Source of the DNA: Octopus bimaculoides
Lineage: Eukaryota
Assembly: GCF_001194135.2 (NCBI RefSeq)
Contig: NC_068997.1
Span: 34,168,950 to 34,232,332 of the forward strand
DNA length: 63,383 nt
Direction of reading: 5' to 3'
Position 1 is the first letter of the stretch, and each line of letters starts with the position of its first letter. This document shows, piece by piece, positions 1,277 through 63,383 of the stretch. Under the pieces are notes generated by a model that saw only the letters and a list, made by a program, of their open reading frames with translations, was not told the origin of the DNA and did no database searches. Both the position numbers and the translations under genes were made by a program.

Positions 1277-1494
1277 AAAAAATGGTTTCAAATTTTGCCA
1301 CAAGGCAGTCATTTTGGGAAGGAGATGTTTCGATTACATCGACCCAGGTGTCCAACTGGTACTTAATTTATCAATCCCGAAAGGATGAAATGCAAAAAGC
1401 CAACCACGGCGGAATTTAAACTCAGAGCGTAGCAGCAGACTAAATACCGCTAAACATTTCGTCTGGCGTGCTAACGATTCTGCCAGCTGACCGT
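1277..1494 (-). mobile_element. tRNA-derived SINE, family B, with 12-bp TSD
   Basis: Head GCTGGCAGAATCGTTAGCACGCC; CTTACCAGTAAC duplicated at 1265-1276 and 1495-1506. Confidence 0.85.
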
Positions 1495-1520
1495 CTTACC
1501 AGTAACGAATAACAGAATGA

Positions 1521-1737
1521 GTATGGTTGGCTCTGGGAAAAGAAATTAGCTTACAAGTTCACATGGTTCCGGGTTCAGTCATACTGCGTGACATTTTGGG
1601 CAAATGGTTTCAATCAGTCCGGGCCAACAAAAGCCTTCTGGGTGGATCTGTTTGACGGAAAGNNNNNNNNNNCCTTCTGGGTGGATCTGTTTGACGGAAA
1701 GTGAAAGAAGCTCGTCGTATATGTGTATCTCCCCCCC

Positions 1738-1772
<35 letters not shown>

Positions 1773-1990
1773 CATGATACATGTGTGCGTGTCTTTGTGA
1801 ATGTATTCGTACTCCACCATCGCTTGAAGACCTGCGTTGGTTTGTTTACGTCTCGGTAACTTAGCGGTTCGGAAAACAGTTAGAGTAAGTACCAGGTTTT
1901 AAAATAAGTACTAGTGTCGATTAGATCTACTAAATTCTTCCTGGCAGTGCCCCAGCATAGGCGAAGTCCAATGACTGTAACAAGAAAAAG
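1521..1990 (+). mobile_element. SINE family A (spans 10-N gap)
   Basis: GGTTCCGGGTTCAGTC B-box-like head, GACGGAAAGTGAAAGAAGC, AACTTAGCGGTTCGG, AGTCCAATGACTG tail. Confidence 0.8.
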
Positions 1991-2089
1991 ACTAATAATA
2001 AAGAGTCAAAATATTAATTTCTTCCTGTTAAACATTAGACTCTTTTATAGAAATATCGATCCTATATCATAGTATTAATAATTTTTTTT

Positions 2090-2272
2090 ATTCAAAGCCA
2101 TCAAATTGAGAGGAGTGTGTTAGGTTAGTCAACATTACATCCCAGTACTTGACTGACACTGGAAGATCGATGAATTAAAGGCTGGATTTGAACTCAGAAA
2201 GTAAAATCCTAGAAAATAAAACAGCAAGTATTTTTCTCCGACGCACTACACATCCTGCAAATTTGCTGCCTT
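2090..2272 (-). mobile_element. degraded SINE family B
   Basis: GGATTTGAACTCAGAA and remnant head similar to other B copies. Confidence 0.55.
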
Positions 2273-2389
2273 TCCGCTCTGTATCATAAGTCTAAATTTC
2301 GCCATACAGATTTAATGGACGTCAGAATTGACTGAATTTATCCAAATGATTCAATGATACTTCCCTTTTCTGCTGCTCACATTACTGGA

Positions 2390-3182
2390 TTCTTTTCTAT
2401 CCTAGGTACAAGGCCCCTAAATTTTGGGGAGGGGGTCGATTAGATCGATCCAGTAAGCAACTGGTACTTAATTTATCAACCCCGAGAGGATGAAAGGCAA
2501 AGTCGATCTCGGTGGAATTTGAACTCAGAACGTAACGGCAGACGAAATACCGCTAAGCATTTCGCCCGGCCTGCTAACGTTTCTTATTTCTTTACTGCCC
2601 ACAAGGGGCTACACACAGAGGGGACAAACAAGGACAGACAAACGGATTAAGTCGATTATATCGACCCCAGTGCGACAAGGACAGACAAACGGTTTAAGTC
2701 GCTTATATCAACCCCACTGCGTAACTGGTACTTATTTAATCAACCCCGAAAGGATGAAAGGCAAAGTCGACCTCGGCGGAATTTGAACGCAGAACATAGC
2801 GGCAGACAAAATACTGCTAAGCATTTCGCCCGGCGTGCTAACGTTTCTTATTTCTTTATTGCCCACAAAGGGATACACATAGAGGAGACAAACAAGGACA
2901 GACAAAGGGATTAAGTCCATTACATCGACCCAGTGCGTGCTAACGTTTCTTATTTCTTTATTGCCCACAAGGGGCTAAACATAGAGGAGACAAACAAGGA
3001 CAGACAAAGGGATTAAGTCGATTATATCGTCTCCAGTGAGTAACAGGTACTTAATTTATCGATCTCGAAAGGATGAAAAGCAAAGTCGACCTCGGCGGAA
3101 TTTGAACTCAGAATGTAAAGACAGACGAAATACCGCTAAGCATTTCGCCCGGCGTGCTAACGTTTCTGCCAGCTCGCCGCCT
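2390..3182 (-). mobile_element. multimeric SINE family B (one head, three cores)
   Basis: Core AAAGGATGAAAGGCAAAGTCGA(C/T)CTCGG(C/T)GGAATTTGAAC three times; long tail GTCTGTCCTTGTTTGTC...GAAATA reads back into AGAAACGTTAGCA. Confidence 0.85.
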
Positions 3183-3769
3183 TGCTGGATGCTATATTTT
3201 AATTGATTAATTTACCCGAGATAAAAGCTCCGCTCTTCTACTCAGCTGCTTACTCAGTTTCCACAGATCTACCAACGACATCCCTCAGTTGCTTACTTTC
3301 ATTTTTTATCTTCTGTTCTGTTGTCATATATAATACTACTAAATTTATATACGCCCCCTACCTCTGTCTGTATCTCTGTCACTGTCTGTCCGTCTGTCTC
3401 TCTGTCTGTCTCTCTGTGTCTGTCACTGTCTGTCTGTCTCTGTCTGTCTGTCTCTATCTCGCTCTCTCACTCTCTCTCACTCACTCTCTCTCTCTGTATG
3501 TCTACCTATCTATCAATCTACCTTACTCTTTCCTTACTTTTTCCTTTGCCCTCTCCCCTATCCAATCTCTGTCTTTTTTTTCACATTTTGTTCTTGTTTA
3601 GTTGTCTATTATTCCTCTCTGACTTTCTTTCAAACACTCTCCGTCAAAATTCCTATTAATTTTAGCCTTTTTCTTTTTGTTTATTTCCGACGTATTTCAC
3701 CTTTCTTACTGTCTTTCATACTGACTCTCCAGCACACAAATCTTAAACACATAAATTCACACCACACAC

Positions 3770-3789
3770 CTAAACACACACACACACCT

Positions 3790-3878
<89 letters not shown>
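3770..3878. repeat. (CA)n microsatellite
   Basis: Direct read. Confidence 0.95.
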
Positions 3879-3879
<1 letters not shown>

Positions 3880-4192
3880 ATATTTATACCCAGCTGTAAA
3901 ATTTCTACAAATGCCTAGCTCAGGTTTACTTTCGTGGATATTATTACTGCTGTTATTTCTCTTTTAACTTCTGTTGTTGAAATAGTCATTTCTTCAATTT
4001 CTCCCTTCTCATTACGCTAACAAACCCCACCGCTACATACAGCCACCCTTCAATGTTTTTATAACGTTCCATATTCTTTGATGTGTGTCAATGTCACCCA
4101 GACATCGTTTACGTCTGCCACTTTCAATAGTTCATACCAACAACTTCCTCTCTATACTCTTACTCCCACTCTACGTTATCTATCTATCTATC

Positions 4193-4223
<31 letters not shown>

Positions 4224-4413
4224 CTATCTACATACATAGATAGATAGATAGATAGTTAGAGATACATACACACACTCACATACACACACATATTCAAACA
4301 TTCATTCAGATAAGTATTCACAAATGCAGTCATACATGCATACTTTCATATGTACATTCATTCATACATACAAAATTCACGCGCACACATGCACACGCAC
4401 GCGCATACATGTA

Positions 4414-4490
<77 letters not shown>

Positions 4491-4803
4491 GAATGCATAT
4501 ATTTGGAAAACAAAAAAATAGCTAACAAAAATAATGCGGTACGGTCTGTTGCCAACGAAAATCGACTCTGAATAAAGAGAGGAATAATCTCAAGAATTAA
4601 AAAATAAACTCAGTTATTGGTCTGGCAGTCTGTTTCCTCTTTTTCTGGAGACAAGAAGGCAGGAGTGGACACATGTTCCTGCCTCAGTAAGTGTCATCAT
4701 CTCATCAGTTGTCCTACCGTGACTCCAGTTGATGAAAGACTTGTACCTATACACAAATAGAGTTACACATACATAGATTCGTATATTCATGCACGCACAC
4801 ACA

Positions 4804-4856
<53 letters not shown>

Positions 4857-4894
4857 ACACAACAGCAGCAGCAGCAATAAAAATAATAAAACTT

Positions 4895-5078
4895 TTTACA
4901 ATAGGCGCAAGGGTGAGAGGATTAATCCAGTACATCTACCCCAGTGCACAAGTGGTACTTGTTTTATCGATCCAGAATGATGAAAGGCAAAGTCGACCTC
5001 TGTAGAAATTGAACTTGAATGCAAAGAGCCGGAAACACTTTATTCAACGCACTAAGGATTCTGCAAACTCGCCTCCTT
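4895..5078 (-). mobile_element. SINE family B
   Basis: GATGAAAGGCAAAGTCGACCTC core; head at ~5075 next to (CAA)n. Confidence 0.75.
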
Positions 5079-5109
5079 GACAACAACAACAACAACAACA
5101 ACAGCAACA

Positions 5110-19590: not shown

Positions 19591-19632
<42 letters not shown>

Positions 19633-19825
19633 AGGCGGTGAGCTGGCAGAATCATTAGCACGCTGGACGAAATGCTTAAGTGGTATTTCGCCCATTGTTA
19701 CGTTCTGAGTTCAAATTCCGCCGAGGTCGACTTTGCATTTCATCCTTTCGGAGTCGATAAATTAAATACCAGTAGAACACTGAAGTCCATGTAACCGACT
19801 TATCCCCACCTCTCCAAGCTGCCCT
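19633..19825 (+). mobile_element. SINE family B after (TTA)n
   Basis: AAGGCGGTGAGCTGGCAGAATC head; GTTCAAATTCC B-box; core. Confidence 0.85.
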
Positions 19826-20250: not shown

Positions 20251-20283
<33 letters not shown>

Positions 20284-20300
20284 CATTATTATTATTAAAA

Positions 20301-20512
20301 TAGTGAGCTGGCAGAATCGTTAGCACGCTGGACGAAATGCTTAAGTGGTGTTTTGACGGTCGCTACATTCTGAGTTCAAATTCTGCCAAGGTCGATTTTG
20401 CCTTTCATCCTTTCGGAGTCGATGAATTAAGTACCAGTGAAACACTGGGGCCAATGATATCGACTAGTCCACTCACTGCAAATTTCAGGCCCTGTGCCTA
20501 TAATAGAAAGGA
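20301..20512 (+). mobile_element. SINE family B embedded in (TTA)n
   Basis: Complete head and core; ends TGTGCCTATAATAGAAAGG followed by (ATT)n. Confidence 0.88.
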
Positions 20513-20541
20513 TTATTATTATTATTATTATTATTATTATT

Positions 20542-20996
20542 GAGTGAAAGAGCCGTGCATGCTATCAAAGTGACACTGGGGTTAAATATACGAAGCTCAA
20601 TATACTCATCATGACTATCCGTCTGATAAGGGTACACCAGACACATGCATCACAACCATAGTACACGACATGGGGATCTTATAACAAGATAATCAGCGCA
20701 TGACCTTGCAGGTGGAGCCCACTTACAATGTTCTTTAGGTCGAGTGGCCCATCCCGCTCAAAAAGCATCTGAATAAGGTTAGTTTTAAGGATGATGAATA
20801 AAACACTGAACTTTCCAGAGGTGAATAATTCAAACCCCAAAGAAATCTTCTCAACACATGGCTATGGTGCTCCCCCACCACTTCTGCTTGGGATCAGAGA
20901 TGTATATATTGTCAACCACCAGGGGACATGCTTAACTGGTTAAAGTGAAACAACTAACAAGCAAATCTGTGGTCGTGAACAGATTATTTGTGTAGT
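20542..20996 (-). mobile_element. non-coding TAA-associated element C (5'-truncated)
   Basis: Homologous to 23676-23985, 24433-24736 and 63123-63383; sense 3' end ...TTTCACTC followed by (AAT)n. Confidence 0.75.
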
Positions 20997-22758
20997 CCAC
21001 AAAACAGATTAGAATGTCTAGAAAAAAATTCCTAACATCGGGTTACAACAAGTAATCTTAGATTCCGAGAACCCTCCTAAGAATCTTAGCTGTCCCTAAT
21101 AACACTGCTTTATGGATCTGTACTAAACTGAGTTTCATGTCTATTTCCTCTATCCATCTTTTCAAATCATTAGGGATAGTTCCTAATCCACCTGCAACTA
21201 CTGGAATGTGTTTTGCCCGCATTTTCCATAGTCTGTAATTCAATGGCTAGGTCCTGGTACTACACTACTTTTCCATTACCTCTCATATTGAGTTTTTCAT
21301 CATTTGGGATTGTAAAGTCAAATATCTACCACTTTCTATTCCCTTTATCGACCACTGCTAAATCATGCGTTGTAGCTTCTATTACTCTGTGAGTCTGAAT
21401 GTTAGAGTCCTGCAACATTTTATATTTCTTATCTTCTAATACTTTACTAGGTTCATATTCATACCATTTGTCAATATTGTCAAATCCTAACTTTCTACAT
21501 AACTCCCAGTAGATTACTCTCCATAGGTTACCATATCTTTTCTTGTATTCCTTCTGTGCCAGCATGTTGCATTCACTTAATATAATGAGTAACACTTTCC
21601 TCTTTTGAGTTGGTTAACCTACATTGGGAATCTACTTGGATTTTGTCTATCTTGGCTTTTATCCAATTCGTCCGTAATGCTTGATCTTGTGCTGCTACTA
21701 ACAAACATTTTGTCTCTCTTTTGAGCTTTCCATTCTGCAACGATGACCATGACTCTAGACTACTATTTGCTGCAACTATCTTTGGAAATTTACCATGCAA
21801 ATCCTTCTCCTGCCAGTCAAATAAATTTTGTTCTTTTTTCTGGTTTTTAACTTTATTCATTGGTTTCCTTATGTCTTGCTGTGACTCTAGCAACTCTTAA
21901 TAAACCTTCTTCACTATTACCTACATATAAGTCTATATCTACTCTAGCTGACTCCACGCAGTCTTCTACAGATATTAGCCCTCTTCCACCTTCCTTTTTG
22001 CTACTCTTGTTCTTGGGTGGAGTCCGCCATTCATATCGAATTCTTTACTAGTTCTTCTGTCTAGCTTTGCTAATTCAGTTTTTGTCTAATCTACAAAAGC
22101 TGCTGATTGTCTAAGTAATGATACTGACCAAGAATTTGCAGCCTTCATTAGATTCGGACCATTTAGCTTTTACTTCTGATGTACCTCTTCTCAATATTCG
22201 TTTTCATTTCTATAATTAATACTATATCAGATTATTATACTCCTAGATATTTATAACTCTCTCTTTCTTTCAATGATTCTAATGTCTAGTCATCTGGTAA
22301 TTGGATGCCTTCACTTTTGACTACCTGTCCCCTTTTTATGGCTAATATTGTACACGTATCTATGCCAAATTCCATACCTGTAACTTTGTTGAGTCTTACA
22401 GTCTGTATTAAGAAATCTATCTCTTTTTCATTCTTACTAAAATGTTTCATATTATCCATGTAGAGCAAATGGTTAATTTTTTCCTTTACTATTTCTGAAT
22501 TGGTACCCTGTCTTTGCCTTCTTTAATACTAAACTGATGGAGATCAAACATAAGACAAATATTAAAGGGGATGACGAGTTTACTTAGAAAATTCCTCTCT
22601 TGATATTAAATTTCCTTATGACTGTGTCACCTGAGTATAGATCTACTTCCCAATACTTTGCTAATTATTTTCTTATATTGTCTGCTATATTGAATATACT
22701 CAAACATTCACTTATCTATGAGTATGGGACTATGTCATAAGCTTTCTTATAATCTATC

Positions 22759-22760
<2 letters not shown>
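20997..22760 (-). mobile_element. decayed R4/Dong element (fam2), 5'-truncated
   Basis: LYMDNMKHF (degenerate YMDD), WQEKDLHGKF...AAQDQALRTNW, LLGTAKILRRVLGI*; 3' UTR matches 62880-62955. Confidence 0.85.

Positions 22761-22812
<52 letters not shown>
22761..22812. repeat. (TTA)n microsatellite spacer
   Basis: Direct read. Confidence 0.95.
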
Positions 22813-22813
<1 letters not shown>

Positions 22814-23425
22814 GTTCAGTAGTTTTATTTTTATAACGTACTTTCACTTCACTACCGAGCGCAGCTCTGTGCGCCTTGGGTATGTGCTGTGGTTTGCTGT
22901 GGTGCTCTTATGTTTACTGTATTGAAAGTGTTTTGCGTAGAATGTGTGCAGTACCCAGTAGTGCAATTTTCTGTATGTTATATATATTTGTAAGTCCTGG
23001 TGTTTTTGTTATGTATTTGTCTGAATATTTTTTTATTATACCTAAGGCACCTACTATGATAGGAATTGTTTCTGTTTTTAGACTCCNNNNNNNNNNTGCT
23101 GTGGTTTGCTGTGGTGCTCTTATGTTTACTGTATTGAAAGTGTTTTGCGTAGAATGTGTGCAGTACCCAGTAGTGCAATTTTCTGTATGTTATATATATT
23201 TGTAAGTCCTGGTGTTTTTGTTATGTATTTGTCTGAATATTTTTTTATTATACCTAAGGCACCTACTATGATAGGAATTGTTTCTGTTTTTAGACTCCAC
23301 ATTCGAGTTATCTCTATTTCCAGGTCTTTGTATTTTGAAAGTTTTTCCATTTCTTTTAGAGAAACGTTGTCATCTGCTGGTATTGATACATCAATTAGAA
23401 AGCATTTTTTTTCTTCATGATCTTT
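22813..23425 (-). mobile_element. R4/Dong fam1 3' fragment (RLE C-terminus plus 3' UTR; gap-flank duplication)
   Basis: CFLIDVSIPADDNVSLKEMEKLSKYKDLEIE...ILRKTLSIQ*; 3' end ACTACTGAAC followed by (AAT)n. Confidence 0.92.
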
Positions 23426-23450
23426 GACATTATTATCATTATTATTATAA

Positions 23451-23662
23451 AGGCGGTGAGCTCGCAGAATCGTTAGCACGTTGGGCAAAATGCTTAGCGA
23501 TGTTTCGCCCGCCTTTACGTTCTGAATTCAAATTCCGCTAAGGTCGACTTTGCCTTTCATCCTTTCGAGATCGATAAATTAAGTACCAGTGAAACACCGG
23601 AGTCGATGTAACTGACTATCCCCCCCACCCCAAATTTCAGGCATTGTACTTATAGTAGAAAT
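23451..23662 (+). mobile_element. SINE family B embedded in (TTA)-type repeats
   Basis: AGGCGGTGAGCTCGCAGAATCG head to ...TATAGTAGAAAT. Confidence 0.85.
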
Positions 23663-23675
23663 AATAATTATTATT

Positions 23676-49763: not shown

Positions 49764-49799
<36 letters not shown>

Positions 49800-50008
49800 C
49801 CTTTCTACTATATTACTACTGAAATTTGTGGGAATAGGGCCAGTTGATTAGATCGACCCAAGTACGCAACTGGTACTTAATTCATCGACCCCGAAAGGAT
49901 GAACGGCAAAATCGACCACGACGGAATTTGAACTTAGAATGTAAAAACAGACGAAATACCGCCAAGGATTTCGCCCGGTGTACTAACAATTCTGCTAGCT
50001 CACCGCCC
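49800..50008 (-). mobile_element. SINE family B embedded in (TAA)n
   Basis: Complete core; (TAA)n at 49767-49799 and 50012-50064. Confidence 0.85.
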
Positions 50009-50010
50009 TT

Positions 50011-50064
<54 letters not shown>

Positions 50065-52195: not shown

Positions 52196-53246
52196 TGCTA
52201 TAAGACCTCCACAATAGCAATGTAAGTTACTTATCAACTGCAAAGGCCTAAATGCTGCGGCTTGTGTACAAAAAGAAAAACAGTAAAATGCCACATTCTA
52301 TTCCCAAGGAAGCTTGCATATTTGCAAGGGAACTTGGCATTAACCCAGAATTAGATGAAAAACCTGAAACTACTGCGCCCAATCTAATAAAACCGATCAA
52401 TTAAATTGCAAGAAAGAACGATCAGAAACAAATTGAGGAGCGATGGAGCCAGAAACCCCTTCAATGACAGTATATTCTTCGACGTCGAAATGTTGATGTA
52501 GACCAAATATCAAACACATCAGTGGTTGAGAAGTTCAGGGCTGAAAGCAAAGACTAAAAGTTTCATATTGGCAGCACAAGATCAAAGCTTGTTTACCAGA
52601 AACTACCTACGATAAGGTAGGACAGTATTTACATTGGAAAATATCTAAACACTACAAAATCGGCACTCTTGCTTACTGGTACGTGACATCATCCTGAGCC
52701 AGTCGTTGATGGTAAAAATGTTACTATCCTATGGGATTTTCTAGTCGACACCGATAGAACGATCCGGGCTATTGGACCAGACGTAATTATTGAAGACAGG
52801 GAAGAAAATACTTGCAGACTAATAGATGTAAGTGTTCCGACTGATAAAAATATGTCTGCAAAAGAATTTGACAATTTAATTAAATATAAGGACCTGAGAA
52901 TTGAAATACAAATAATGTCGCATCTTAAAACAAGAACTGTTCCTATTATTGTAGGTGCTCTAGGTATGATAAAAATGGGATGTCAGAAACGTCTACTCGA
53001 TATCCCGGTAGAACCATCTCTCAGAGAAATCCAAAAGGTTGTACTAGTGTACAACCCATATCTTTAGAAATATCCTTTCAATTTAAAAGTCTGTGTTGTA
53101 TTACATGAAGATATTTCACTATTGCCCCTGTCACTTCCCATCCACAAGCTTTCAGTCATACTGTAACATCTCTTATCCTTTACTCACTCTAGGGCGCTGG
53201 GTGTTCCTCGGCAAGTGATTGTAAAACATATATGCAGATTAAAAGT
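52196..53246 (+). mobile_element. R4/Dong 3' fragment (fam6), CCHC region deleted
   Basis: AAQDQSLFTRNY jumps to DKVGQYLHWKI; KNMSAKEFDNLIKYKDLRIEI...PIIVGALG; followed by (TAA/CAA)n. Confidence 0.8.
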
Positions 53247-53279
53247 AAATAACAATAACAACAACAACAATAATAATTT

Positions 53280-53600
53280 AAGCAAATAAATGGTAGAGAA
53301 CGAAGTACTGAAGATAGGAAAAATTTGCAGAGGACGCTAGAAAGTTCTGGAGTAATATTTGGAATAAGCCAGTCAATCATAATGGAGATGCAATATGGTT
53401 AAAGAAAGTGAGGGAAGAAATAGTGAGTGAGAAGCATCCAGATCTAAGACTAACTAGTGCATTAATGCGTAAAATGTAAATGAAAATGCCCAAGACCAGA
53501 TTTAGTCGAAGAATACTGGCTAAAGAAGCTGCATCTATTTGCAATGGATGCGTGAATGTAATTTCAGTCCAGGTATGGATTTTGCTATGAAGTGGCAAAA
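53280..53600 (+). pseudogene. very decayed R4/Dong pre-RT fragment
   Basis: KCPRPDLVEEYWLKKL resembles WKAPGPDxxxxYWLK. Confidence 0.45.
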
Positions 53601-53951
53601 GAGACAGTCATGATTTTTATTTTGCCTGGTATTGGGCAAGTGTGTCTGTTGGTTGCGGAATATAATTCTTCTATTGTTTTTTTTTCTTCAACTCAAATTG
53701 TTTGGAGGCATCGTGACGTATTTTACACCATGCAGATTGATCTCGGTAATGACTTTCCCAAGATGTCAGGTTAAGCTGTAGAGATTTTAGTGATTGCTTC
53801 AACTTATCTTTATACTTAAGGAGAGGTCTTCCTTTGCCGCAATATTCCCACCCCCCATTTGTTGGCCATTTGTTAGCTAAAAGCTTGAGATGTCCATACG
53901 TTTCTGCTAAAACTTTATTTTAGCTATGCTCTATCCAACCTGTCTCCGCTC

Positions 53952-54006
<55 letters not shown>

Positions 54007-54699
54007 TACGCTTTCATAAGTACAGACGACTTCCAGGATTTTTATTTAACGCCCAAAATATGTGTAAGCTCGTTTCTGAAATTTCAAACTTTGAGACAGC
54101 TCTCTCTGTAATTCGAAAGTTCGAGATGTTTGTAAACAAATTTCTATATGCTTGCTAAACCATTGCGATGTTCATATATTTCTATATCTTGGCTACGCTG
54201 AGATATTTATAGATTTCTATTGTTTTGCTAAAACTTTATCTTATTATGCTCTGTTCAACCTGTCTCCACTCCTTTCCAAAATCCCTACACACCCGCTTCC
54301 TATTCACCGTCAGATCTGTCAACCATTCGACCAATCATACAGCCTGTATTACAAGACCCAACACCCCCACTCTCTAATGTAATGTCACAGCAAGATCAGC
54401 AGCTAAACCAACAGGCTTAAATTTGTCCTCATTTATTGTTTCACAGACTGAAACCTATCATCTCTCTATAGCAACAACAACACCCCAACAAATGTTTGGA
54501 AGATGGCCTGAACAAGGCAACAGTAAGTATTTGTCAGTGTTAGTGCTAGCAATAGCACTAACAATGACAATAATATATAATAGGTAAAAGTGGTTCAAAT
54601 GGGAAAAAAAGAAGTAATTGTGATACAATGACAACTTGCCAAAATAGGGAATAATCAACATTAACATGTGATGCAGTGCAGCTGTAACTTGGTCGGGCC

Positions 54700-55040
54700 G
54701 TCGGTGACTAGACTGGCAACTCCACTCAGCTTGCTTGGCTAGCAGGGTGAAATACTGATTTTTGAATATCATGCAGGATGAAAAACAAAATCCGGCAAAG
54801 GGCAGAGGAACTCAGAAGAGTCAATGACCATCCAAAAACGGATGGACAGATCTCGTTAGCCTCGGTCGGCAATCTGTCTAGGAGAAGGAACAAGCTGATT
54901 AAAAAACTGGGGTCTCGATAGAGCTCCTTAATCATCTGGTGACAACCTGTCAGTGCTTATGCAACTAGATGGCCTTTTCCTCAAGTGGCATCAATATGCA
55001 GCGGAGTCTAGACTACCTGGACGAGAGAGTGGAATGGGCA
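54700..55040 (+). mobile_element. RTE-like 5' UTR fragment
   Basis: GGCAATCTGTCTAGGAGAAGGAACAAGCTGATT resembles the motif common in RTE 5' regions (recalled, not searched). Confidence 0.35.
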
Positions 55041-55045
55041 ACACA

Positions 55046-55121
<76 letters not shown>

Positions 55122-56275: not shown

Positions 56276-56461
56276 ACCAGGACTTACAAATATATATAAC
56301 ATACAGAAAATTGCACTACTGGGTACTGCACACATTCTACGCAAAACACTTTCAATACAGTAAACATAAGAGCACCACAGCAAACCACAGCACATACCCA
56401 AGGCGCACAGAGCTGCGCTCGGTAGTGAAGTGAAAGCACGTTATAAAAATAAACCTACTGA
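56276..56461 (+). mobile_element. R4/Dong fam1 3' end (after gap)
   Basis: PGLTNIYNIQKIALLGTAHILRKTLSIQ* plus UTR, then (AAT)n. Confidence 0.9.
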
Positions 56462-56463
56462 AC

Positions 56464-56525
<62 letters not shown>

Positions 56526-59262: not shown

Positions 59263-59265
<3 letters not shown>

Positions 59266-62041
59266 GAAAACAAGAGAAGAGATCTGTCAATCCTTAATGA
59301 AACTAGTAGACAATCAAGCAACTAGAAGAGAACAAAAATACTGCGCAATTGCAAAATTACAGAAAAAGGCTTACCTGAGGTAAAGCAACATATCTTTCCC
59401 AAAGCACAAAGAATCCGCCGGTATGAGAAACGCCAACGTTTCTTTGAACAAAACAAACAGTTCAACTACAACCCCAAAAGATTCTACCAAGAACTTGGCA
59501 AAATTAAAATAGACATCAATGCAGCACGAACAACAGAAGTGGAAGAATGTTGGAAAGAAATATGGTCAACGAAGGAACAACCTCAGAAAAGGTGTACCAA
59601 AACAATGAACTCAGCACCTGAACAACTCTGGATCCCTATAACGACTGAAGATGTCAACCAGGCACTGTAAAAATTAAGTAAATGGAAGGAACCCAGGCAC
59701 GATAAGATCCTCAACTTCTGATTAAAATATGTAACAGGAACACATAAAAAAAAACTGACTGAAAACTTTAATCACATACTAGCAGAGCCAGAGACAATGC
59801 CTGAATGGCTCACGGAAGGGAAAACTCCCCTAATTCCCGAATCCACTGAAACGGCAAACCCACAAAATTACAGTCAAATTACTTGTCTCCCTACAATACA
59901 CAAATTCACAAAGCCTTTACTGCAATAATATTGCAGAGAATGGGCAAACATCTAGAAGAAATATAACCTGTTTCCAGAAGAGCAGAAGGGATGTTGCAAG
60001 AGCTCTTACGGCTGTTAAGATCAACTAATGATCAATAAAGCCATAATTGAAGACAGCCGCAGAAAGAAGAAGGGTCTAAGTATGGCCTGGATCGATTACT
60101 GAAAGCCTTTTGATAGTATTCCTCACACATGGATCCTAGAAACACTAACCATGAACAAAGTAGCACCAATAATCATAAAATATACCAAACATTCCATGAA
60201 TAAATGGCAGACAGTGCTATAGCTCCAAGCAAAAGAGGGACTCATAAAAACCAAAGCCGTTCCCATTAGAAGAGGAATATTCCAGGGAGACACACCCTCG
60301 TCACTCCTTTTTTGCTTGACACTGACACCTTTATCTGACATGCTAAACCGAACTGGATGCGGATACAACTATTACGGCAAAACAATCAGCTACCTCTTAT
60401 ATATGGATGATCTAAAACAGTATTCTACAAATGATAAACAGTTGGAAGCATTACTACAGACAGTACATGGATTTACCAAAGAAATAAATATGAAATTTGG
60501 CTAAGAAAAATGTGCCAAAGCAACCTTGAAAAGAGGAAAACCAGTTAAGAGTAACAACATCATACTAGATAAATCAAATGAAATAAGAGAATTAGACCAA
60601 AGCCAGATAAACAAATATTTAAGAATCAATGAACAAGATACGATACAACACACACAAATGGAAGATAAAATGAAAAAAAAGAATACTATAGACGAGTTAG
60701 ATTAATACCGAAAACAGAGCTCAATGCGAAAAACAAGATAATAGGTGTCAACACTTTAACCTTCCCAGTTATAAGTCACAGTTAAAATATCTTTAGTTGG
60801 ACGCTAAATGAACTAATCAAAATAGACAGGAAAACTAGAAAAATGACAGGACTTAGGATGCACCACCCAAATTCTGACATAGAAATGTTATATATACAAC
60901 GTATAGAAGGTGGTAGAGGACTTATATAGCTACAAAAATATTACAAAATAACTACCATAGGACTACAAAAATACCTACTTCTGAAGCACGGAAAACTAAT
61001 ACAAAAATAGCCACAAAACACGAACAGAACAAAAACTCTTTTCAGTCTTTAAGGAAGCTGACAAATACAAACAAGAAGTCACACTACCTAACAAATATGA
61101 AGGAAAAGAAGAAACAACAAAAGCTGTAAAACAAATGAAATCAAAACTAGAACAGCGACGGATCATGATGAAACGAGGGCAAGAAAAACCCCTTCATGGC
61201 AAATATTGGGTTAAACTAAATAGAAAAGAAATAGACAAAGCAAAATCCCAACAATAACTGAGAAGCTCAAGACTCAAAGCAGAGACTGAAGGATTTTCAA
61301 TTTCAGCACAAGACCAAAGCCTCCCCACCAGAAATTACCAAAAATATATAATGAAAAGAAGCATAACAAGCAACTGCAGAATATGTGGAGATGGAGATGA
61401 AACAATAAATTATATTGACTCTGGCTGCCCACTCTTGGCTAAGAGGGAATATATTCCCAGACACGACAGAGTTGGGATCTATATACACTGGAAGCTATGC
61501 AAACACTATGGAATAACAACAGAAAAAAGATGGTATAGGCACACACCAGAAAAGGTCACAGAAAATGAAAAGGCAACAATACTATGGGATATGCCAATAC
61601 ACACAGATAGGGAAATTAAGGCAAATAGACCAGATAATAGTTGCGGAGATCGTGAAGATATAAAATGCTTTCTAATTGATGTATCAATTGCAACAGATGA
61701 CAATGTTTCTCTAAAAGAAATGGAGAAACTTTCAAAATACAAAGACCTGGAAATAGAAGTAACTCGAATGTGGAATCTAAAAACAGAAACAATTCCTATC
61801 ATAGTAGGTGCCTTAGGTATAATAAAAAATATTCAGACAAATACATAACAAAAACACTAGGACTTACAAACATATATAACATAGAGAAAATAGCACTAAT
61901 AGGCACCGCACACATCCTACGTAAAACACTTTCAATACAGTAACCATAAGAGCATTACAGCAAACCACAGCACATACCCAGGGCACACAGACCTGCGCTC
62001 GGTAGTGCAGTGAAAGCACGTGATGAAAATAAGACTACTGA
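59263..62041 (+). mobile_element. R4/Dong fam1, 5'-truncated, RT to 3' UTR continuous
   Basis: GIFQGD; LLYMDDLK; CRICGDGDETINYIDSGC..RHDRVG; ANRPD...LIDVSI...EKLSKYKDL; ends GACTACTG followed by (AAT)n. Confidence 0.93.
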
Positions 62042-62160
62042 ATAATAATAATAATNNNNNNNNNNNNNNNNNNNNNNNNNNNNNNNNNNNNNNNNNNNNN
62101 NNNNNNNNNNNNNNNNNNNNNNNNNNNNNNNNNNNNNNNNNNNNNNNNNNNNNNNTAATA

Positions 62161-62308
62161 ATCCTTTCTACTATAGGCACAAGGCCTGAAATTTGGGGGA
62201 TTGGGCAGACGATTACATCGACCACAGTGTTTCACTGGTACTTAATTTTTCGACCCTGACAGGATGAAAGGCAAAGTCGACCTCGGCTGCATTTCAACTC
62301 AGAACATA
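62161..62308 (-). mobile_element. SINE family B, 5'-truncated, within (TAA)n
   Basis: CCTTTCTACTATAGGCACAAGGCC...GGATGAAAGGCAAAGTCGACCTCGG. Confidence 0.82.
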
Positions 62309-62350: not shown

Positions 62351-62412
<62 letters not shown>

Positions 62413-62425
62413 ATAATAATAATAA

Positions 62426-62958
62426 GTATTAATCCACTGGAAGTTATGTAGAAGGCTACGATTTGAACATACTGATAAATGGTATAAACATGAACCTAGT
62501 AAAGTACTAGAAAATATGAAATATAAAATCTTGTGGGACCTTAACATTCAGACTGACAGAATAATAGAAGCTAGAACGCATGGTTTAGCAGTGGTAGATA
62601 AAGAGAATAGAAAGCGGTAGATATTTGACTTTACAGTCCCAAATGATGACAAGGTCAATGCGAGACGTATCGGAAAAGTAGTGTAGTACGAGGACCTAGC
62701 CATTGAATTACAGAGACTACGGAAAATGCGGGCAAAACATATCCCAGTAGTTGCAGGTGGATTAGGAATTGTCCCTTAAGATTTGAAAAGATGGATAGAG
62801 GAAATAGACATAAAACTCACTTTAGTGCAGCTTCAGAAAACTGTTATTAGGGAGAGTTAGGATACTTAGGAGGGTACTTGGGATCTAAGATTATGTGTTG
62901 TAGCCCGATGTTAAGAATTTTTCTTTTTTTCCAACAGTCTAATCTGTTTTGTGTATAT
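62426..62958 (+). mobile_element. R4/Dong fam2 3' fragment
   Basis: KYKILWDLNIQTDRIIEA...IFDFTVP...YEDLAIEL...IPVVAGGLG; UTR matches 20997-21060. Confidence 0.85.
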
Positions 62959-62959
62959 A

Positions 62960-63021
<62 letters not shown>

Positions 63022-63122
63022 CAACAACAAGAACAAAAACAACAACAATAACAACAACAACAATAATAACAATAACAATATTAATAATAATAATAATAAT
63101 AATAATGATAATAATAATAATA
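62959..63122. repeat. (TAA)n/(CAA)n compound microsatellite spacer
   Basis: Direct read. Confidence 0.95.
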
Positions 63123-63383
63123 ATGCCCTGATGCAGTACAATGCCCTGATGCAGTACCAGGCAGTGGCTCTCATGGCTTCTGATCTTAATCGATTGGAAG
63201 TGTTATCATGTATATTGTTTTGTCTTGGTATAAAAGATGGGCTACAGCAAATATTCTGCTTAATACCACAGATTTGCTTGTCAGTTGTTTGACCTTAACC
63301 AGTTGAGCATGTCCCTAGGTGGCTGACGATATGTGCATCTCTGATCATGAGCAGAAGTAGTGGGGGAGCATCATAGCCATGTG
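63123..63383 (+). mobile_element. element C 5' part (runs off window)
   Basis: Starts after (TAA)n with ATGCCCTGATGCAGTAC; GGGCTACAGCAAATATTCTGC onward matches the minus-strand copies at 20.9 and 23.9 kb. Confidence 0.75.

What the first reader, a model, noticed from the sequence alone, without database searches (positions are those of the whole stretch)
20542..20996. Element C: candidate non-autonomous parasite of the Dong RLE machinery
Seen: four copies (20542, 23676, 24433, 63123) of a non-coding sequence of about 570 bp in total. All are co-oriented with neighbouring R4 elements; the three copies with a visible 3' end finish at (AAT)n, two of them as ...CACTC|AATAAT. Two copies lack the 5' part, as expected for target-primed reverse transcription. 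No ORF, no clear tRNA head and no obvious match to the R4 3' UTRs in the window. Established: non-autonomous partners of RLE elements are rare; R2 SIDEs are the known model. Inference: a SIDE-like or SINE-like element that exploits TAA-specific R4 proteins.
Basis: partly seen in the sequence, partly recalled or inferred. Interest (0 to 1): 0.72.

Follow-up and report, generated by a model that had tools for sequence, protein, structure and literature searches.

The report
Old non-coding retroposon at TAA repeats
A four-copy, non-coding repeat of about 455 bp that ends in (AAT)n among Dong-like LINE fragments is real and probably hitch-hiked on their copying machinery, but four old copies in one window cannot prove this.

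Summary
Element C is real. BLAST and an nhmmer profile find exactly four copies in the window (E 1e-41 to 1e-159) and nothing else. All four are co-oriented with the restriction-like-endonuclease (RLE) LINE fragments. The three visible 3' ends stop at ...(C/T)ACTC(AAT)n.

The "570 bp" is not supported. The shared unit is about 455 bp. Copies 1, 2 and 4 begin at the same base (TGGGCTACA) behind three unrelated sequences: the complete 3' end of LINE D, a unique 138 bp, and a unique 115 bp. Copy 3 is fused to an ORF-internal point of LINE E. No copy has TAA repeats at its 5' junction, whereas at least 8 LINE fragments do.

C has no ORF over 53 aa, no RT/RLE remnant and no tRNA or Rfam match. It carries a conserved T4-5 run and shares no 3' sequence with any LINE 3' end sampled from the window. 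Those LINE 3' UTRs are only about 49-194 bp.

The best reading is an old (K2P 0.15-0.26), discrete non-coding RNA copied in trans at (TAA)n. Its upstream partners were probably joined by reverse-transcriptase template jumps. It fails the SIDE and SINE tests that could be run here. A long 3' UTR of an unseen LINE family is not excluded, because no external copies could be reached. Interest is modest.

The parts
20542..20999 (-). Element C copy 1. This is the only complete core (458 bp), running from TGGACTACA... to ...TTTCACTC.
   Evidence: nhmmer E 3e-159, profile positions 1-453
20512..20541 (-). (AAT)10 tail of copy 1. A tRNA-like SINE in reverse orientation (20276-20511) follows it.
20998..22759 (-). 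LINE D copy. It is 5'-truncated and carries RT and RLE remnants. Its complete 3' end (...TCTGTTTTGTG) is fused to the first base of C with a 2-nt TG overlap and no TAA repeat. A (AAT)18 array lies upstream at 22760-22813.
23676..23982 (-). Element C copy 2. It has the same 5' start (TGGGCTACA) and a deletion of about 148 bp before the last ~10 nt. It ends CTTACTC(AAT)3, then a reverse SINE follows.
23983..24119 (-). Unique 137-138 bp directly upstream of copy 2, bounded by an N gap (24120-24366). It has no homology to anything in the window and no coding remnant.
24435..24743 (-). Element C copy 3, the 3' ~310 bp only. It is joined, with about 1 nt of overlap, to an ORF-internal position of LINE E.
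24367..24434 (-). (AAT)22 tail of copy 3.
24744..28002 (-). LINE E copy. Its 5' part and RT are present. It lacks the last ~1015 bp (RLE domain and 3' UTR) that the + copy has, and C copy 3 takes their place. A (AAT)16 array lies upstream at 28003-28050.
63238..63383 (+). Element C copy 4, the first 146 bp of the core. It runs off the end of the window.
63125..63237 (+). Leader found only in copy 4 (113-115 bp). It starts with an 18-bp direct duplication and lies between the (AAT)n array and the C core.
62426..62959 (+). LINE D copy, the 3' 535 bp. An impure (AAT/AAC)n array of 163 bp (62960-63122) follows, and then the copy-4 leader.
59265..62040 (+). LINE E copy with its own 3' end. It shows what copy 3's E partner has lost: a CCHC knuckle, the RPD...D...K RLE motif, and a 3' UTR ending ...GACTACTG(AAT)n.

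Best explanation
Element C is an old, discrete, non-coding retroposon unit of about 455 nt. Its RNA ended in ...CACTC(UAA)n. It was reverse-transcribed at nicked (TAA)n arrays by the reverse transcriptase and restriction-like endonuclease of a Dong-like LINE, supplied in trans.

C is not derived from LINE families D or E, nor from any of the other families whose remnants lie in this window. It carries no Pol III head, so it was probably made as a Pol II or read-through transcript.

In all four copies the cDNA did not end at the target. It continued into a second, unrelated sequence. In copy 1 this is the 3' end of LINE D RNA. In copy 3 it is an internal point of LINE E RNA. In copies 2 and 4 it is an unknown sequence. 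What the TAA arrays flank is therefore a chimera X-C. The most economical mechanism is template jumping or switching by the RLE-LINE reverse transcriptase, at or before the 5' end of the C RNA.

Shown here: the copies, their common 5' boundary, their tails, their orientation, the absence of coding and of homology to the LINEs, and the array-free 5' junctions. Inferred: trans-mobilisation, the identity of the enzyme donor, and template jumping.
For: 1. Four copies and no others. They are 78-87% identical, K2P 0.145-0.258, the same age class as the D pair (0.136) and the long E pair (0.167).

2. All three visible 3' ends abut (AAT)n. All four copies have the orientation of at least 15 RLE-LINE coding remnants relative to the array strand.

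3. The neighbouring elements are RLE LINEs. E gives Pfam RVT_1 at 5e-15. Its best solved relatives are R2 proteins at 3e-13. An intact relative, P0001, shows the CCHC knuckle plus RPD...D...K.

4. c1, c2 and c4 share the 5' boundary at the same base, behind three unrelated sequences. In c1 the partner is the complete 3' end of D, joined with a 2-nt overlap. By my own arithmetic, under random truncation over 455 positions the chance that two further copies fall within 1 nt of the first is about 4e-5.

5. At least 8 LINE fragments abut a TAA array directly at their 5' junction: 22759, 28002, 42498, 51399, 55136, 56524, 59265 and 62426. C does so in 0 of 4 copies. The units that the arrays flank are D+C, E+C and 115 bp+C.

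6. No RT/RLE remnant lies in C or in its unique upstream pieces. In every other TAA-terminated LINE unit the coding remnant reaches within about 49-194 bp of the array.

7. C's last 100 nt show no similarity to the 3' ends of twelve LINE units (z <= 1.1).

8. Precedent from the literature. R2 reverse transcriptase jumps in vivo from the 5' end of its template to tRNA or U12 RNA (PMC3414825). A LINE reverse transcriptase switches templates at specific sites and makes bipartite and tripartite chimeras (PMC2104539).
Against: - There are only four old copies. One is cut by the window end and one is bounded by an N gap.
- No copy has TAA on both sides of a bare C, so a free-standing C insertion has not been seen.
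- Two of the four copies lie just downstream of LINE D. This could mean that C travels with D rather than alone.
- No transcript evidence exists and no external copies were found.
- No conserved structure was seen: fold z -0.31 and an alifold covariation term of +1.06.
- Deletions at or after integration could also remove the TAA repeats at the 5' junctions.
- The enzyme donor is not identified. All LINE copies in the window are dead.
Confidence: 0.45

Rival explanations
1. C is simply the 3' terminal part (a long 3' UTR) of a further autonomous Dong-like LINE family whose body is not present in this window. The four copies would be ordinary 5'-truncated insertions, later rearranged.
For: 5'-truncated LINE 3' ends are the commonest object in this window. 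With only four copies, none is long enough to be sure. The unique sequences upstream of c2 and c4 have unknown origin. No outside data could be obtained to test this reading.
Against: Three copies start at the same base behind three mutually unrelated sequences, one of which is the intact 3' end of another LINE. The 115 and 138 bp upstream carry no RT/RLE remnant. All other LINE families here have 3' UTRs of about 49-194 bp, against at least 455 bp for C. Truncated LINE fragments here abut TAA arrays, and C never does.
Confidence: 0.25
2. C is not independent. It is a downstream sequence captured by a dead LINE D master, through read-through transcription or 3' transduction. The composite D...C is what was copied, and it used C's end as the new 3' end.
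For: Two of four copies lie immediately 3' of D, directly in c1 and after (AAT/AAC)n plus 115 bp in c4. With about 15 LINE fragments of which 2 are D, this would happen by chance roughly 1% of the time (my rough estimate). The two D copies share two in-frame TAG stops at homologous codons (21328-21326 and 62618-62620; 21262-21260 and 62684-62686; read). They therefore descend from a dead master that needed help in trans. D and C pairs have similar divergence.
Against: c2 has no D upstream within 138 bp, and c3 is fused to E. The D-C junctions of c1 and c4 differ. D has its own TAA-tailed 3' end in c4. c2 is at least as close to c4 (87%) as c1 is (85.5%).
Confidence: 0.15
3. The array-free 5' junctions and the chimeras are secondary. 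They would arise from target deletions at second-strand cleavage, later deletions between tandem insertions, an old inverted segmental duplication, or mis-assembly. C copies would then be plain insertions, and fewer than four of them independent.
For: The region has ten N gaps and a perfect 212-bp duplication around a gap. The order E ... SINE ... D-C recurs in mirror image in the two halves of the window. The E/C junction of c3 could be a simple deletion of about 1.2 kb.
Against: No junction is shared between the two halves: the D 5' ends, the E 5' ends and the D-C junctions all differ. A random deletion would not end exactly at D's last base and at C's first base, the same base as in c2 and c4.
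Confidence: 0.1

Closest known systems
R2 SIDEs (short internally deleted elements; Eickbush & Eickbush 2012, PMC3414825)
   Same: Both are short, non-coding passengers of a restriction-like-endonuclease LINE. Both sit at the LINE's own specific target and are copied by target-primed reverse transcription. [quoted passage not shown]
   Different: SIDEs consist of the parent's 5' ribozyme plus the parent's 3' UTR. C shares no sequence with any LINE in the window, and no HDV-like ribozyme was detectable (a low-power test).
LINE-dependent SINEs (tRNA, 5S, 7SL or snRNA head plus a LINE-related or repeat tail; e.g. SINEU, PMC4494074)
   Same: The size (about 455 nt), the lack of coding, and a 3' tail repeat identical to that of the presumed partner LINEs.
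   Different: C has no small-RNA head. A T4-5 run conserved in the three copies that cover it would terminate Pol III. The real tRNA-like SINE of this genome has an (ATT)n tail and lies in the opposite orientation.
Chimeric retrocopies made by LINE template switching (MGL/WEIRD/Mg-SINE chimeras, PMC2104539; U6-L1 type chimeras in mammals, from my own knowledge)
   Same: Two RNA-derived parts are fused head to tail without target sequence between them. The 3' part is always the one that carries the priming end. Switching occurs at a fixed site of the first template.
   Different: Here the 3' partner is a dedicated repeat family at a microsatellite target. No target-site duplication can be read in a TAA array, so the single-event origin of each chimera cannot be proven.
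Dong (Bombyx mori) and the Dong-R4 LINEs reported as abundant in octopus genomes (PMC3774820, PMC13282606, PMC8967140)
   Same: The (TAA)n arrays as insertion site, the fixed orientation and the (TAA)n tail. The neighbours D and E have an RT plus a C-terminal CCHC/RLE domain.
   Different: C has no reading frame at all and no similarity to those elements. It can at most be their passenger.

Membership tests
R2-type SIDE | The 3' end is homologous to the 3' UTR of the parent autonomous LINE | tested here: not met
   C's last 100 nt against the 3' ends of 12 LINE units gives z <= 1.1. The nhmmer profile finds nothing but the four copies. Only families present in the window were tested.
R2-type SIDE | The 5' end carries the parent's HDV-like self-cleaving ribozyme | tested here: inconclusive
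   Rfam found no ribozyme. A home-made permissive descriptor gave hits at background rate (3% per position), and none was shared between copies. The same test also found none at the 5' end of LINE E, so its power is low.
R2-type SIDE | Inserted at the parent's specific target in the parent's orientation | tested here: met
   All three visible 3' ends lie in (AAT)n arrays, co-oriented with all RLE LINE fragments.
SINE | A 5' head derived from tRNA, 5S, 7SL or snRNA with an internal Pol III promoter | tested here: not met
   ARAGORN found 0. Rfam found 0 at gathering score and only chance-level hits at E of about 1-10.
SINE | Can be transcribed end to end by Pol III (no internal T4+ terminator) | tested here: not met
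   A T4-5 run at core position ~236 is conserved in c1, c2 and c3, and further runs occur in c1 and c3. That such a run terminates Pol III is established knowledge.
SINE | Short (under ~600 bp), non-coding, with a 3' tail like that of a partner LINE | tested here: met
   The core is 455-458 bp, the longest ORF is 53 aa, and the tail is (AAT)n.
3' end of an autonomous Dong/R4 LINE | Longer copies continue upstream into the RT/RLE reading frame of the same family | tested here: not met
   c1 continues into the complete 3' end of a different LINE. c3 continues into an internal point of another. c2 and c4 continue into unique non-coding sequence. With four copies only, genome-wide data are needed.
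3' end of an autonomous Dong/R4 LINE | 5' ends of copies scattered (random truncation) and joined to the target array | tested here: not met
   Three of four copies start at one base. None of the four abuts a TAA array, against at least 8 LINE fragments that do.
Dong-like RLE LINE (applied to neighbours D and E, the presumed enzyme donors) | An RT followed by a CCHC knuckle and a PD-(D/E)xK endonuclease, with insertion in (TAA)n | tested here: met
   RVT_1 at 5e-15. R2 proteins are the best solved relatives. The CCHC and RPD...D...K motifs are read in P0001 and in the E + copy. Both ends lie in TAA arrays. Clade placement by phylogeny was not done.
Template-jump chimera | Two RNA-derived parts fused without target sequence, the whole flanked by target sequence or a duplication | tested here: inconclusive
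   The units D+C, E+C and 115 bp+C are each flanked by TAA arrays, with overlaps of 0-2 nt at the fusion. No target-site duplication can be scored in a microsatellite.

The most novel reading that the evidence does not exclude
C is a head-less, ribozyme-less non-autonomous retroposon whose only link to its Dong-like partner is the (UAA)n tail. It acts as a preferred priming template from whose fixed 5' end the RLE reverse transcriptase regularly jumps to other RNAs. It would then be a natural 3' cassette that drags LINE fragments and other transcripts into TAA microsatellites.
Probability: 0.3. Interest if true: 0.55.

Novelty: new member of a known kind. Interest (0 to 1): 0.35.

Why it matters
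Passengers of restriction-like-endonuclease LINEs are few. R2 SIDEs are the textbook case.

A passenger that shares nothing but the tail repeat with its partner would suggest that microsatellite-specific Dong-like elements recognise their template loosely, through the tail. That differs from the strict 3' UTR recognition shown for R2 and R1. The recurrent fusion at one base of C would be in vivo evidence of template jumping by this class of enzyme, which is now being developed for site-specific gene insertion.

If C turns out to be a LINE 3' UTR, the finding is routine repeat annotation.

Tried and rejected
- Outside copies through the protein database. A six-frame translation of c1 and c4 was used as a pseudo-protein query and gave no hit.
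- Look-up of a window ORF near the right end, to extend c4 beyond the window. It is not on record.
- Exact-pattern scans of metagenome and prokaryote genome contigs with two conserved C strings. All gave 0.
- Testing D-C linkage through D-family contigs. The best D relative is only 46% identical, so no same-species D contigs exist in the collection.
- E-family contigs were found: L001 is 98% identical to window fragments, and L002 about 78%. They are about 1 kb and end at the E tail, so they say nothing about C.
- tRNA or other small-RNA head: rejected.
- Stable or conserved RNA structure: rejected as unsupported (z -0.31; no covariation).
- HDV-like ribozyme. A first whole-window scan timed out. 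The targeted scan gave background-level hits only.
- Homology between the c4 leader and D's 3' end. A z of 3.3 dissolved on alignment.
- Homology between the c4 leader and the c2 upstream piece: none.
- A seemingly long non-coding stretch after the LINE at 52222-53091 looked like a precedent for a long 3' UTR. That LINE in fact ends at a degenerate (AAT/AAC)n array at about 53243-53277, giving a UTR of about 170 bp.
- Identification of the source species from accession numbers in the literature: nothing found. My impression that the SINE and LINE content is octopus-like rests on memory and on PMC13282606 and PMC8967140. It is not a test.

Full report
**What is there**

The window is a dense nest of retroposon fragments separated by (TAA)n-type microsatellites and ten N gaps. 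A blastn of the finding's region against the window shows three further matches. These are 24405-24743 (84%), 23694-23982 (78%) and 63238-63383 (85%, opposite strand). An nhmmer profile built from the four copies finds only these four (E 3e-159 to 3e-50) and then noise at E 1.8. The repeat is therefore real and far beyond chance.

On the element's own strand the copies are:
- c1: 20999->20542
- c2: 23982->23676
- c3: 24743->24435
- c4: 63238->63383, where the window ends.

c1 and c3 end TTTCACTC(AAT)n. c2 ends CTTACTC(AAT)3 and lacks about 148 bp just before that end. Pairwise K2P distances are 0.145-0.258, so these are old copies.

**What surrounds it**

tblastn with 161 LINE proteins collected from two protein searches maps 15 coding remnants. 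All have the same orientation relative to the array strand as C.

Family E (24744-28002 '-', 59265-62040 '+', plus several 3' fragments) gives Pfam RVT_1. Its best solved relatives are R2 proteins. An intact relative from a public read set, 98% identical to window fragments, shows the CCHC knuckle and the RPD...D...K endonuclease motif. Family D (20998-22759 '-', 62426-62959 '+') has the same architecture in degenerate form.

These are restriction-like-endonuclease LINEs sitting in (TAA)n, that is, Dong-like. Dong-R4 LINEs are reported as abundant in octopus genomes (PMC13282606, PMC8967140). I did not do a clade phylogeny. The species assignment is an impression, not a result (one search found nothing).

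The '570 bp' comes from c4 alone. The 113-115 bp between the (AAT)n array and the shared core (63125-63237) match nothing else in the window. They do not match the 138 bp upstream of c2 or D's 3' end.

The homology of c1, c2 and c4 begins at the same base, the T of TGGGCTACA (20999, 23982, 63238). What lies upstream differs in each case:
- c1: the complete 3' end of LINE D (...TCTGTTTTGTG), joined with a 2-nt overlap and no TAA repeat.
- c2: a unique sequence, then an N gap.
- c4: the unique leader.
- c3: this copy is truncated by about 143 nt and is joined to an ORF-internal point of LINE E. That E copy thereby lacks the last ~1015 bp that the + copy of E has.

c1 and c2 are therefore not random 5' truncations. 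Under random truncation, a common start in three copies has a chance of about 4e-5 (my arithmetic).

**A second regularity**

At least eight LINE fragments abut a TAA array directly at their 5' junction. C does so in none of four copies. The arrays flank composites instead: (AAT)18-D-C-(AAT)10, (AAT)16-E-C-(AAT)22, and (AAT/AAC)n-115 bp-C.

**What C is not**

- It has no ORF above 53 aa and no RT/RLE remnant, either in C or in its unique upstream pieces.
- It has no tRNA and no Rfam family at gathering score. Relaxed scans give only E of about 1-10.
- A T4-5 run is conserved in the three copies that cover it. This argues against a Pol III transcript.
- It shares no sequence with any LINE here, neither overall nor in the last 100 nt.
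- It is no more stable than shuffled sequence (z -0.31) and shows no covariation.
- Dong and R4 carry a 5' HDV-like ribozyme that cuts at the element's first base (PMC3774820). A permissive descriptor of my own gave only background-level hits at C's start and at the leader's start. It found none at E's 5' end either, so this negative result is weak.

**Is C a long 3' UTR?**

In every other TAA-terminated LINE unit the coding remnant reaches to within about 49-194 bp of the array. One apparent exception, after 53091, turned out to end at a degenerate array at about 53243. C is at least 455 bp with no coding remnant upstream in the two copies where unique sequence precedes it. Together with the fixed start, this weakens the UTR reading. 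Four copies cannot exclude it.

**Most likely mechanism**

C was a discrete non-coding RNA with a (UAA)n 3' end. A Dong-like enzyme supplied in trans reverse-transcribed it at nicked TAA arrays. At the 5' end of C (c1, c2, c4), or before it (c3), the enzyme went on to a second template, which produced X-C chimeras.

In vivo jumps from the 5' end of an R2 template to tRNA or U12 RNA are documented (PMC3414825). So is switching at fixed sites of a first template with bipartite and tripartite products (PMC2104539). Trans-mobilisation, the donor family and the jumps are inferences. The anatomy is shown.

**The D question**

Two of the four copies follow LINE D. The two D copies share two in-frame TAG stops at homologous codons (21328-21326 and 62618-62620; 21262-21260 and 62684-62686; read). 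They therefore descend from a dead master.

This could mean that D...C travelled as a composite. It could also mean that D RNA was a frequent jump acceptor, or it could be coincidence (roughly 1% by my estimate). The D-C junctions differ between c1 and c4, and c2 and c3 lack D, so I rank the composite reading lower.

**Limits**

No outside copy of C could be reached. The collection holds no same-species D contigs. c4 is cut by the window end, and c2's upstream is cut by an N gap.

**Verdict**

The SIDE and SINE labels fail the tests that could be run. 'Non-autonomous passenger of Dong-like machinery' remains the best reading, at under even odds (0.45). It would be a new member of a known kind and is of modest interest.

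Noticed in passing
19611-19817 (+), 20276-20511 (+), 23429-23666 (+), 49788-50030 (-), 62156-62308 (-), and others at 1334-5089: A tRNA-like SINE always lies in the opposite orientation to the RLE LINE fragments and to C. Its own tail is (ATT)n, the complement of the LINEs' (TAA)n. SINE tails may therefore be what seeds the TAA target arrays that the Dong-like elements then colonise.
   Followed up: partly
arrays listed; switch between 46778 and 49260: Every TAA-type array left of 46778 reads (TTA)n on the + strand, and every one right of 49260 reads (TAA)n. The order E ... SINE ... D-C recurs in mirror image in the two halves. No junction is shared, so an old inverted duplication is neither shown nor excluded.
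   Followed up: partly
21328-21326 and 21262-21260 (-); 62618-62620 and 62684-62686 (+): The two LINE D copies have different 5' truncation points but share two in-frame TAG stops in the endonuclease region. They were copied from an already dead master, which makes D a trans-mobilised LINE.
   Followed up: partly
22885-23298: A perfect 212-bp tandem duplication (100% identity) lies around a 10-N gap inside an E 3' fragment. It is probably an assembly artefact.
   Followed up: no
22786-23086, 23097-23429, 56276-56491; locus L001: These E 3' fragments are 98-99% identical to each other and to a public read-set contig (Logan SRR7158634) that has an intact C-terminal ORF. A young and possibly active E subfamily therefore exists, yet no young C copy accompanies it in this window.
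   Followed up: partly
53278-55046 (+): This unit starts with a short LINE N-terminal remnant right after a degenerate (AAT/AAC)n array. It ends ...GGGCAACACAG(TAA)30 after about 1.5 kb with no detected coding remnant. It may be another chimeric or non-coding TAA-tailed unit.
   Followed up: partly
63122-63157: An 18-bp exact direct duplication (AATGCCCTGATGCAGTAC x2) lies at the junction between the (AAT)n array and the copy-4 leader.
   Followed up: no
62351-62412 and 63017-63080: Pure (TAG)20 and (AAC)n blocks are embedded in the TAA arrays. These are variant repeats that have spread within the microsatellites.
   Followed up: no
27607-27681 and 27901-28007 (-): Tandem repeats of 38 bp and 27/54 bp lie in the 5' untranslated part of the long E copy, directly after its upstream TAA array.
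   Followed up: no
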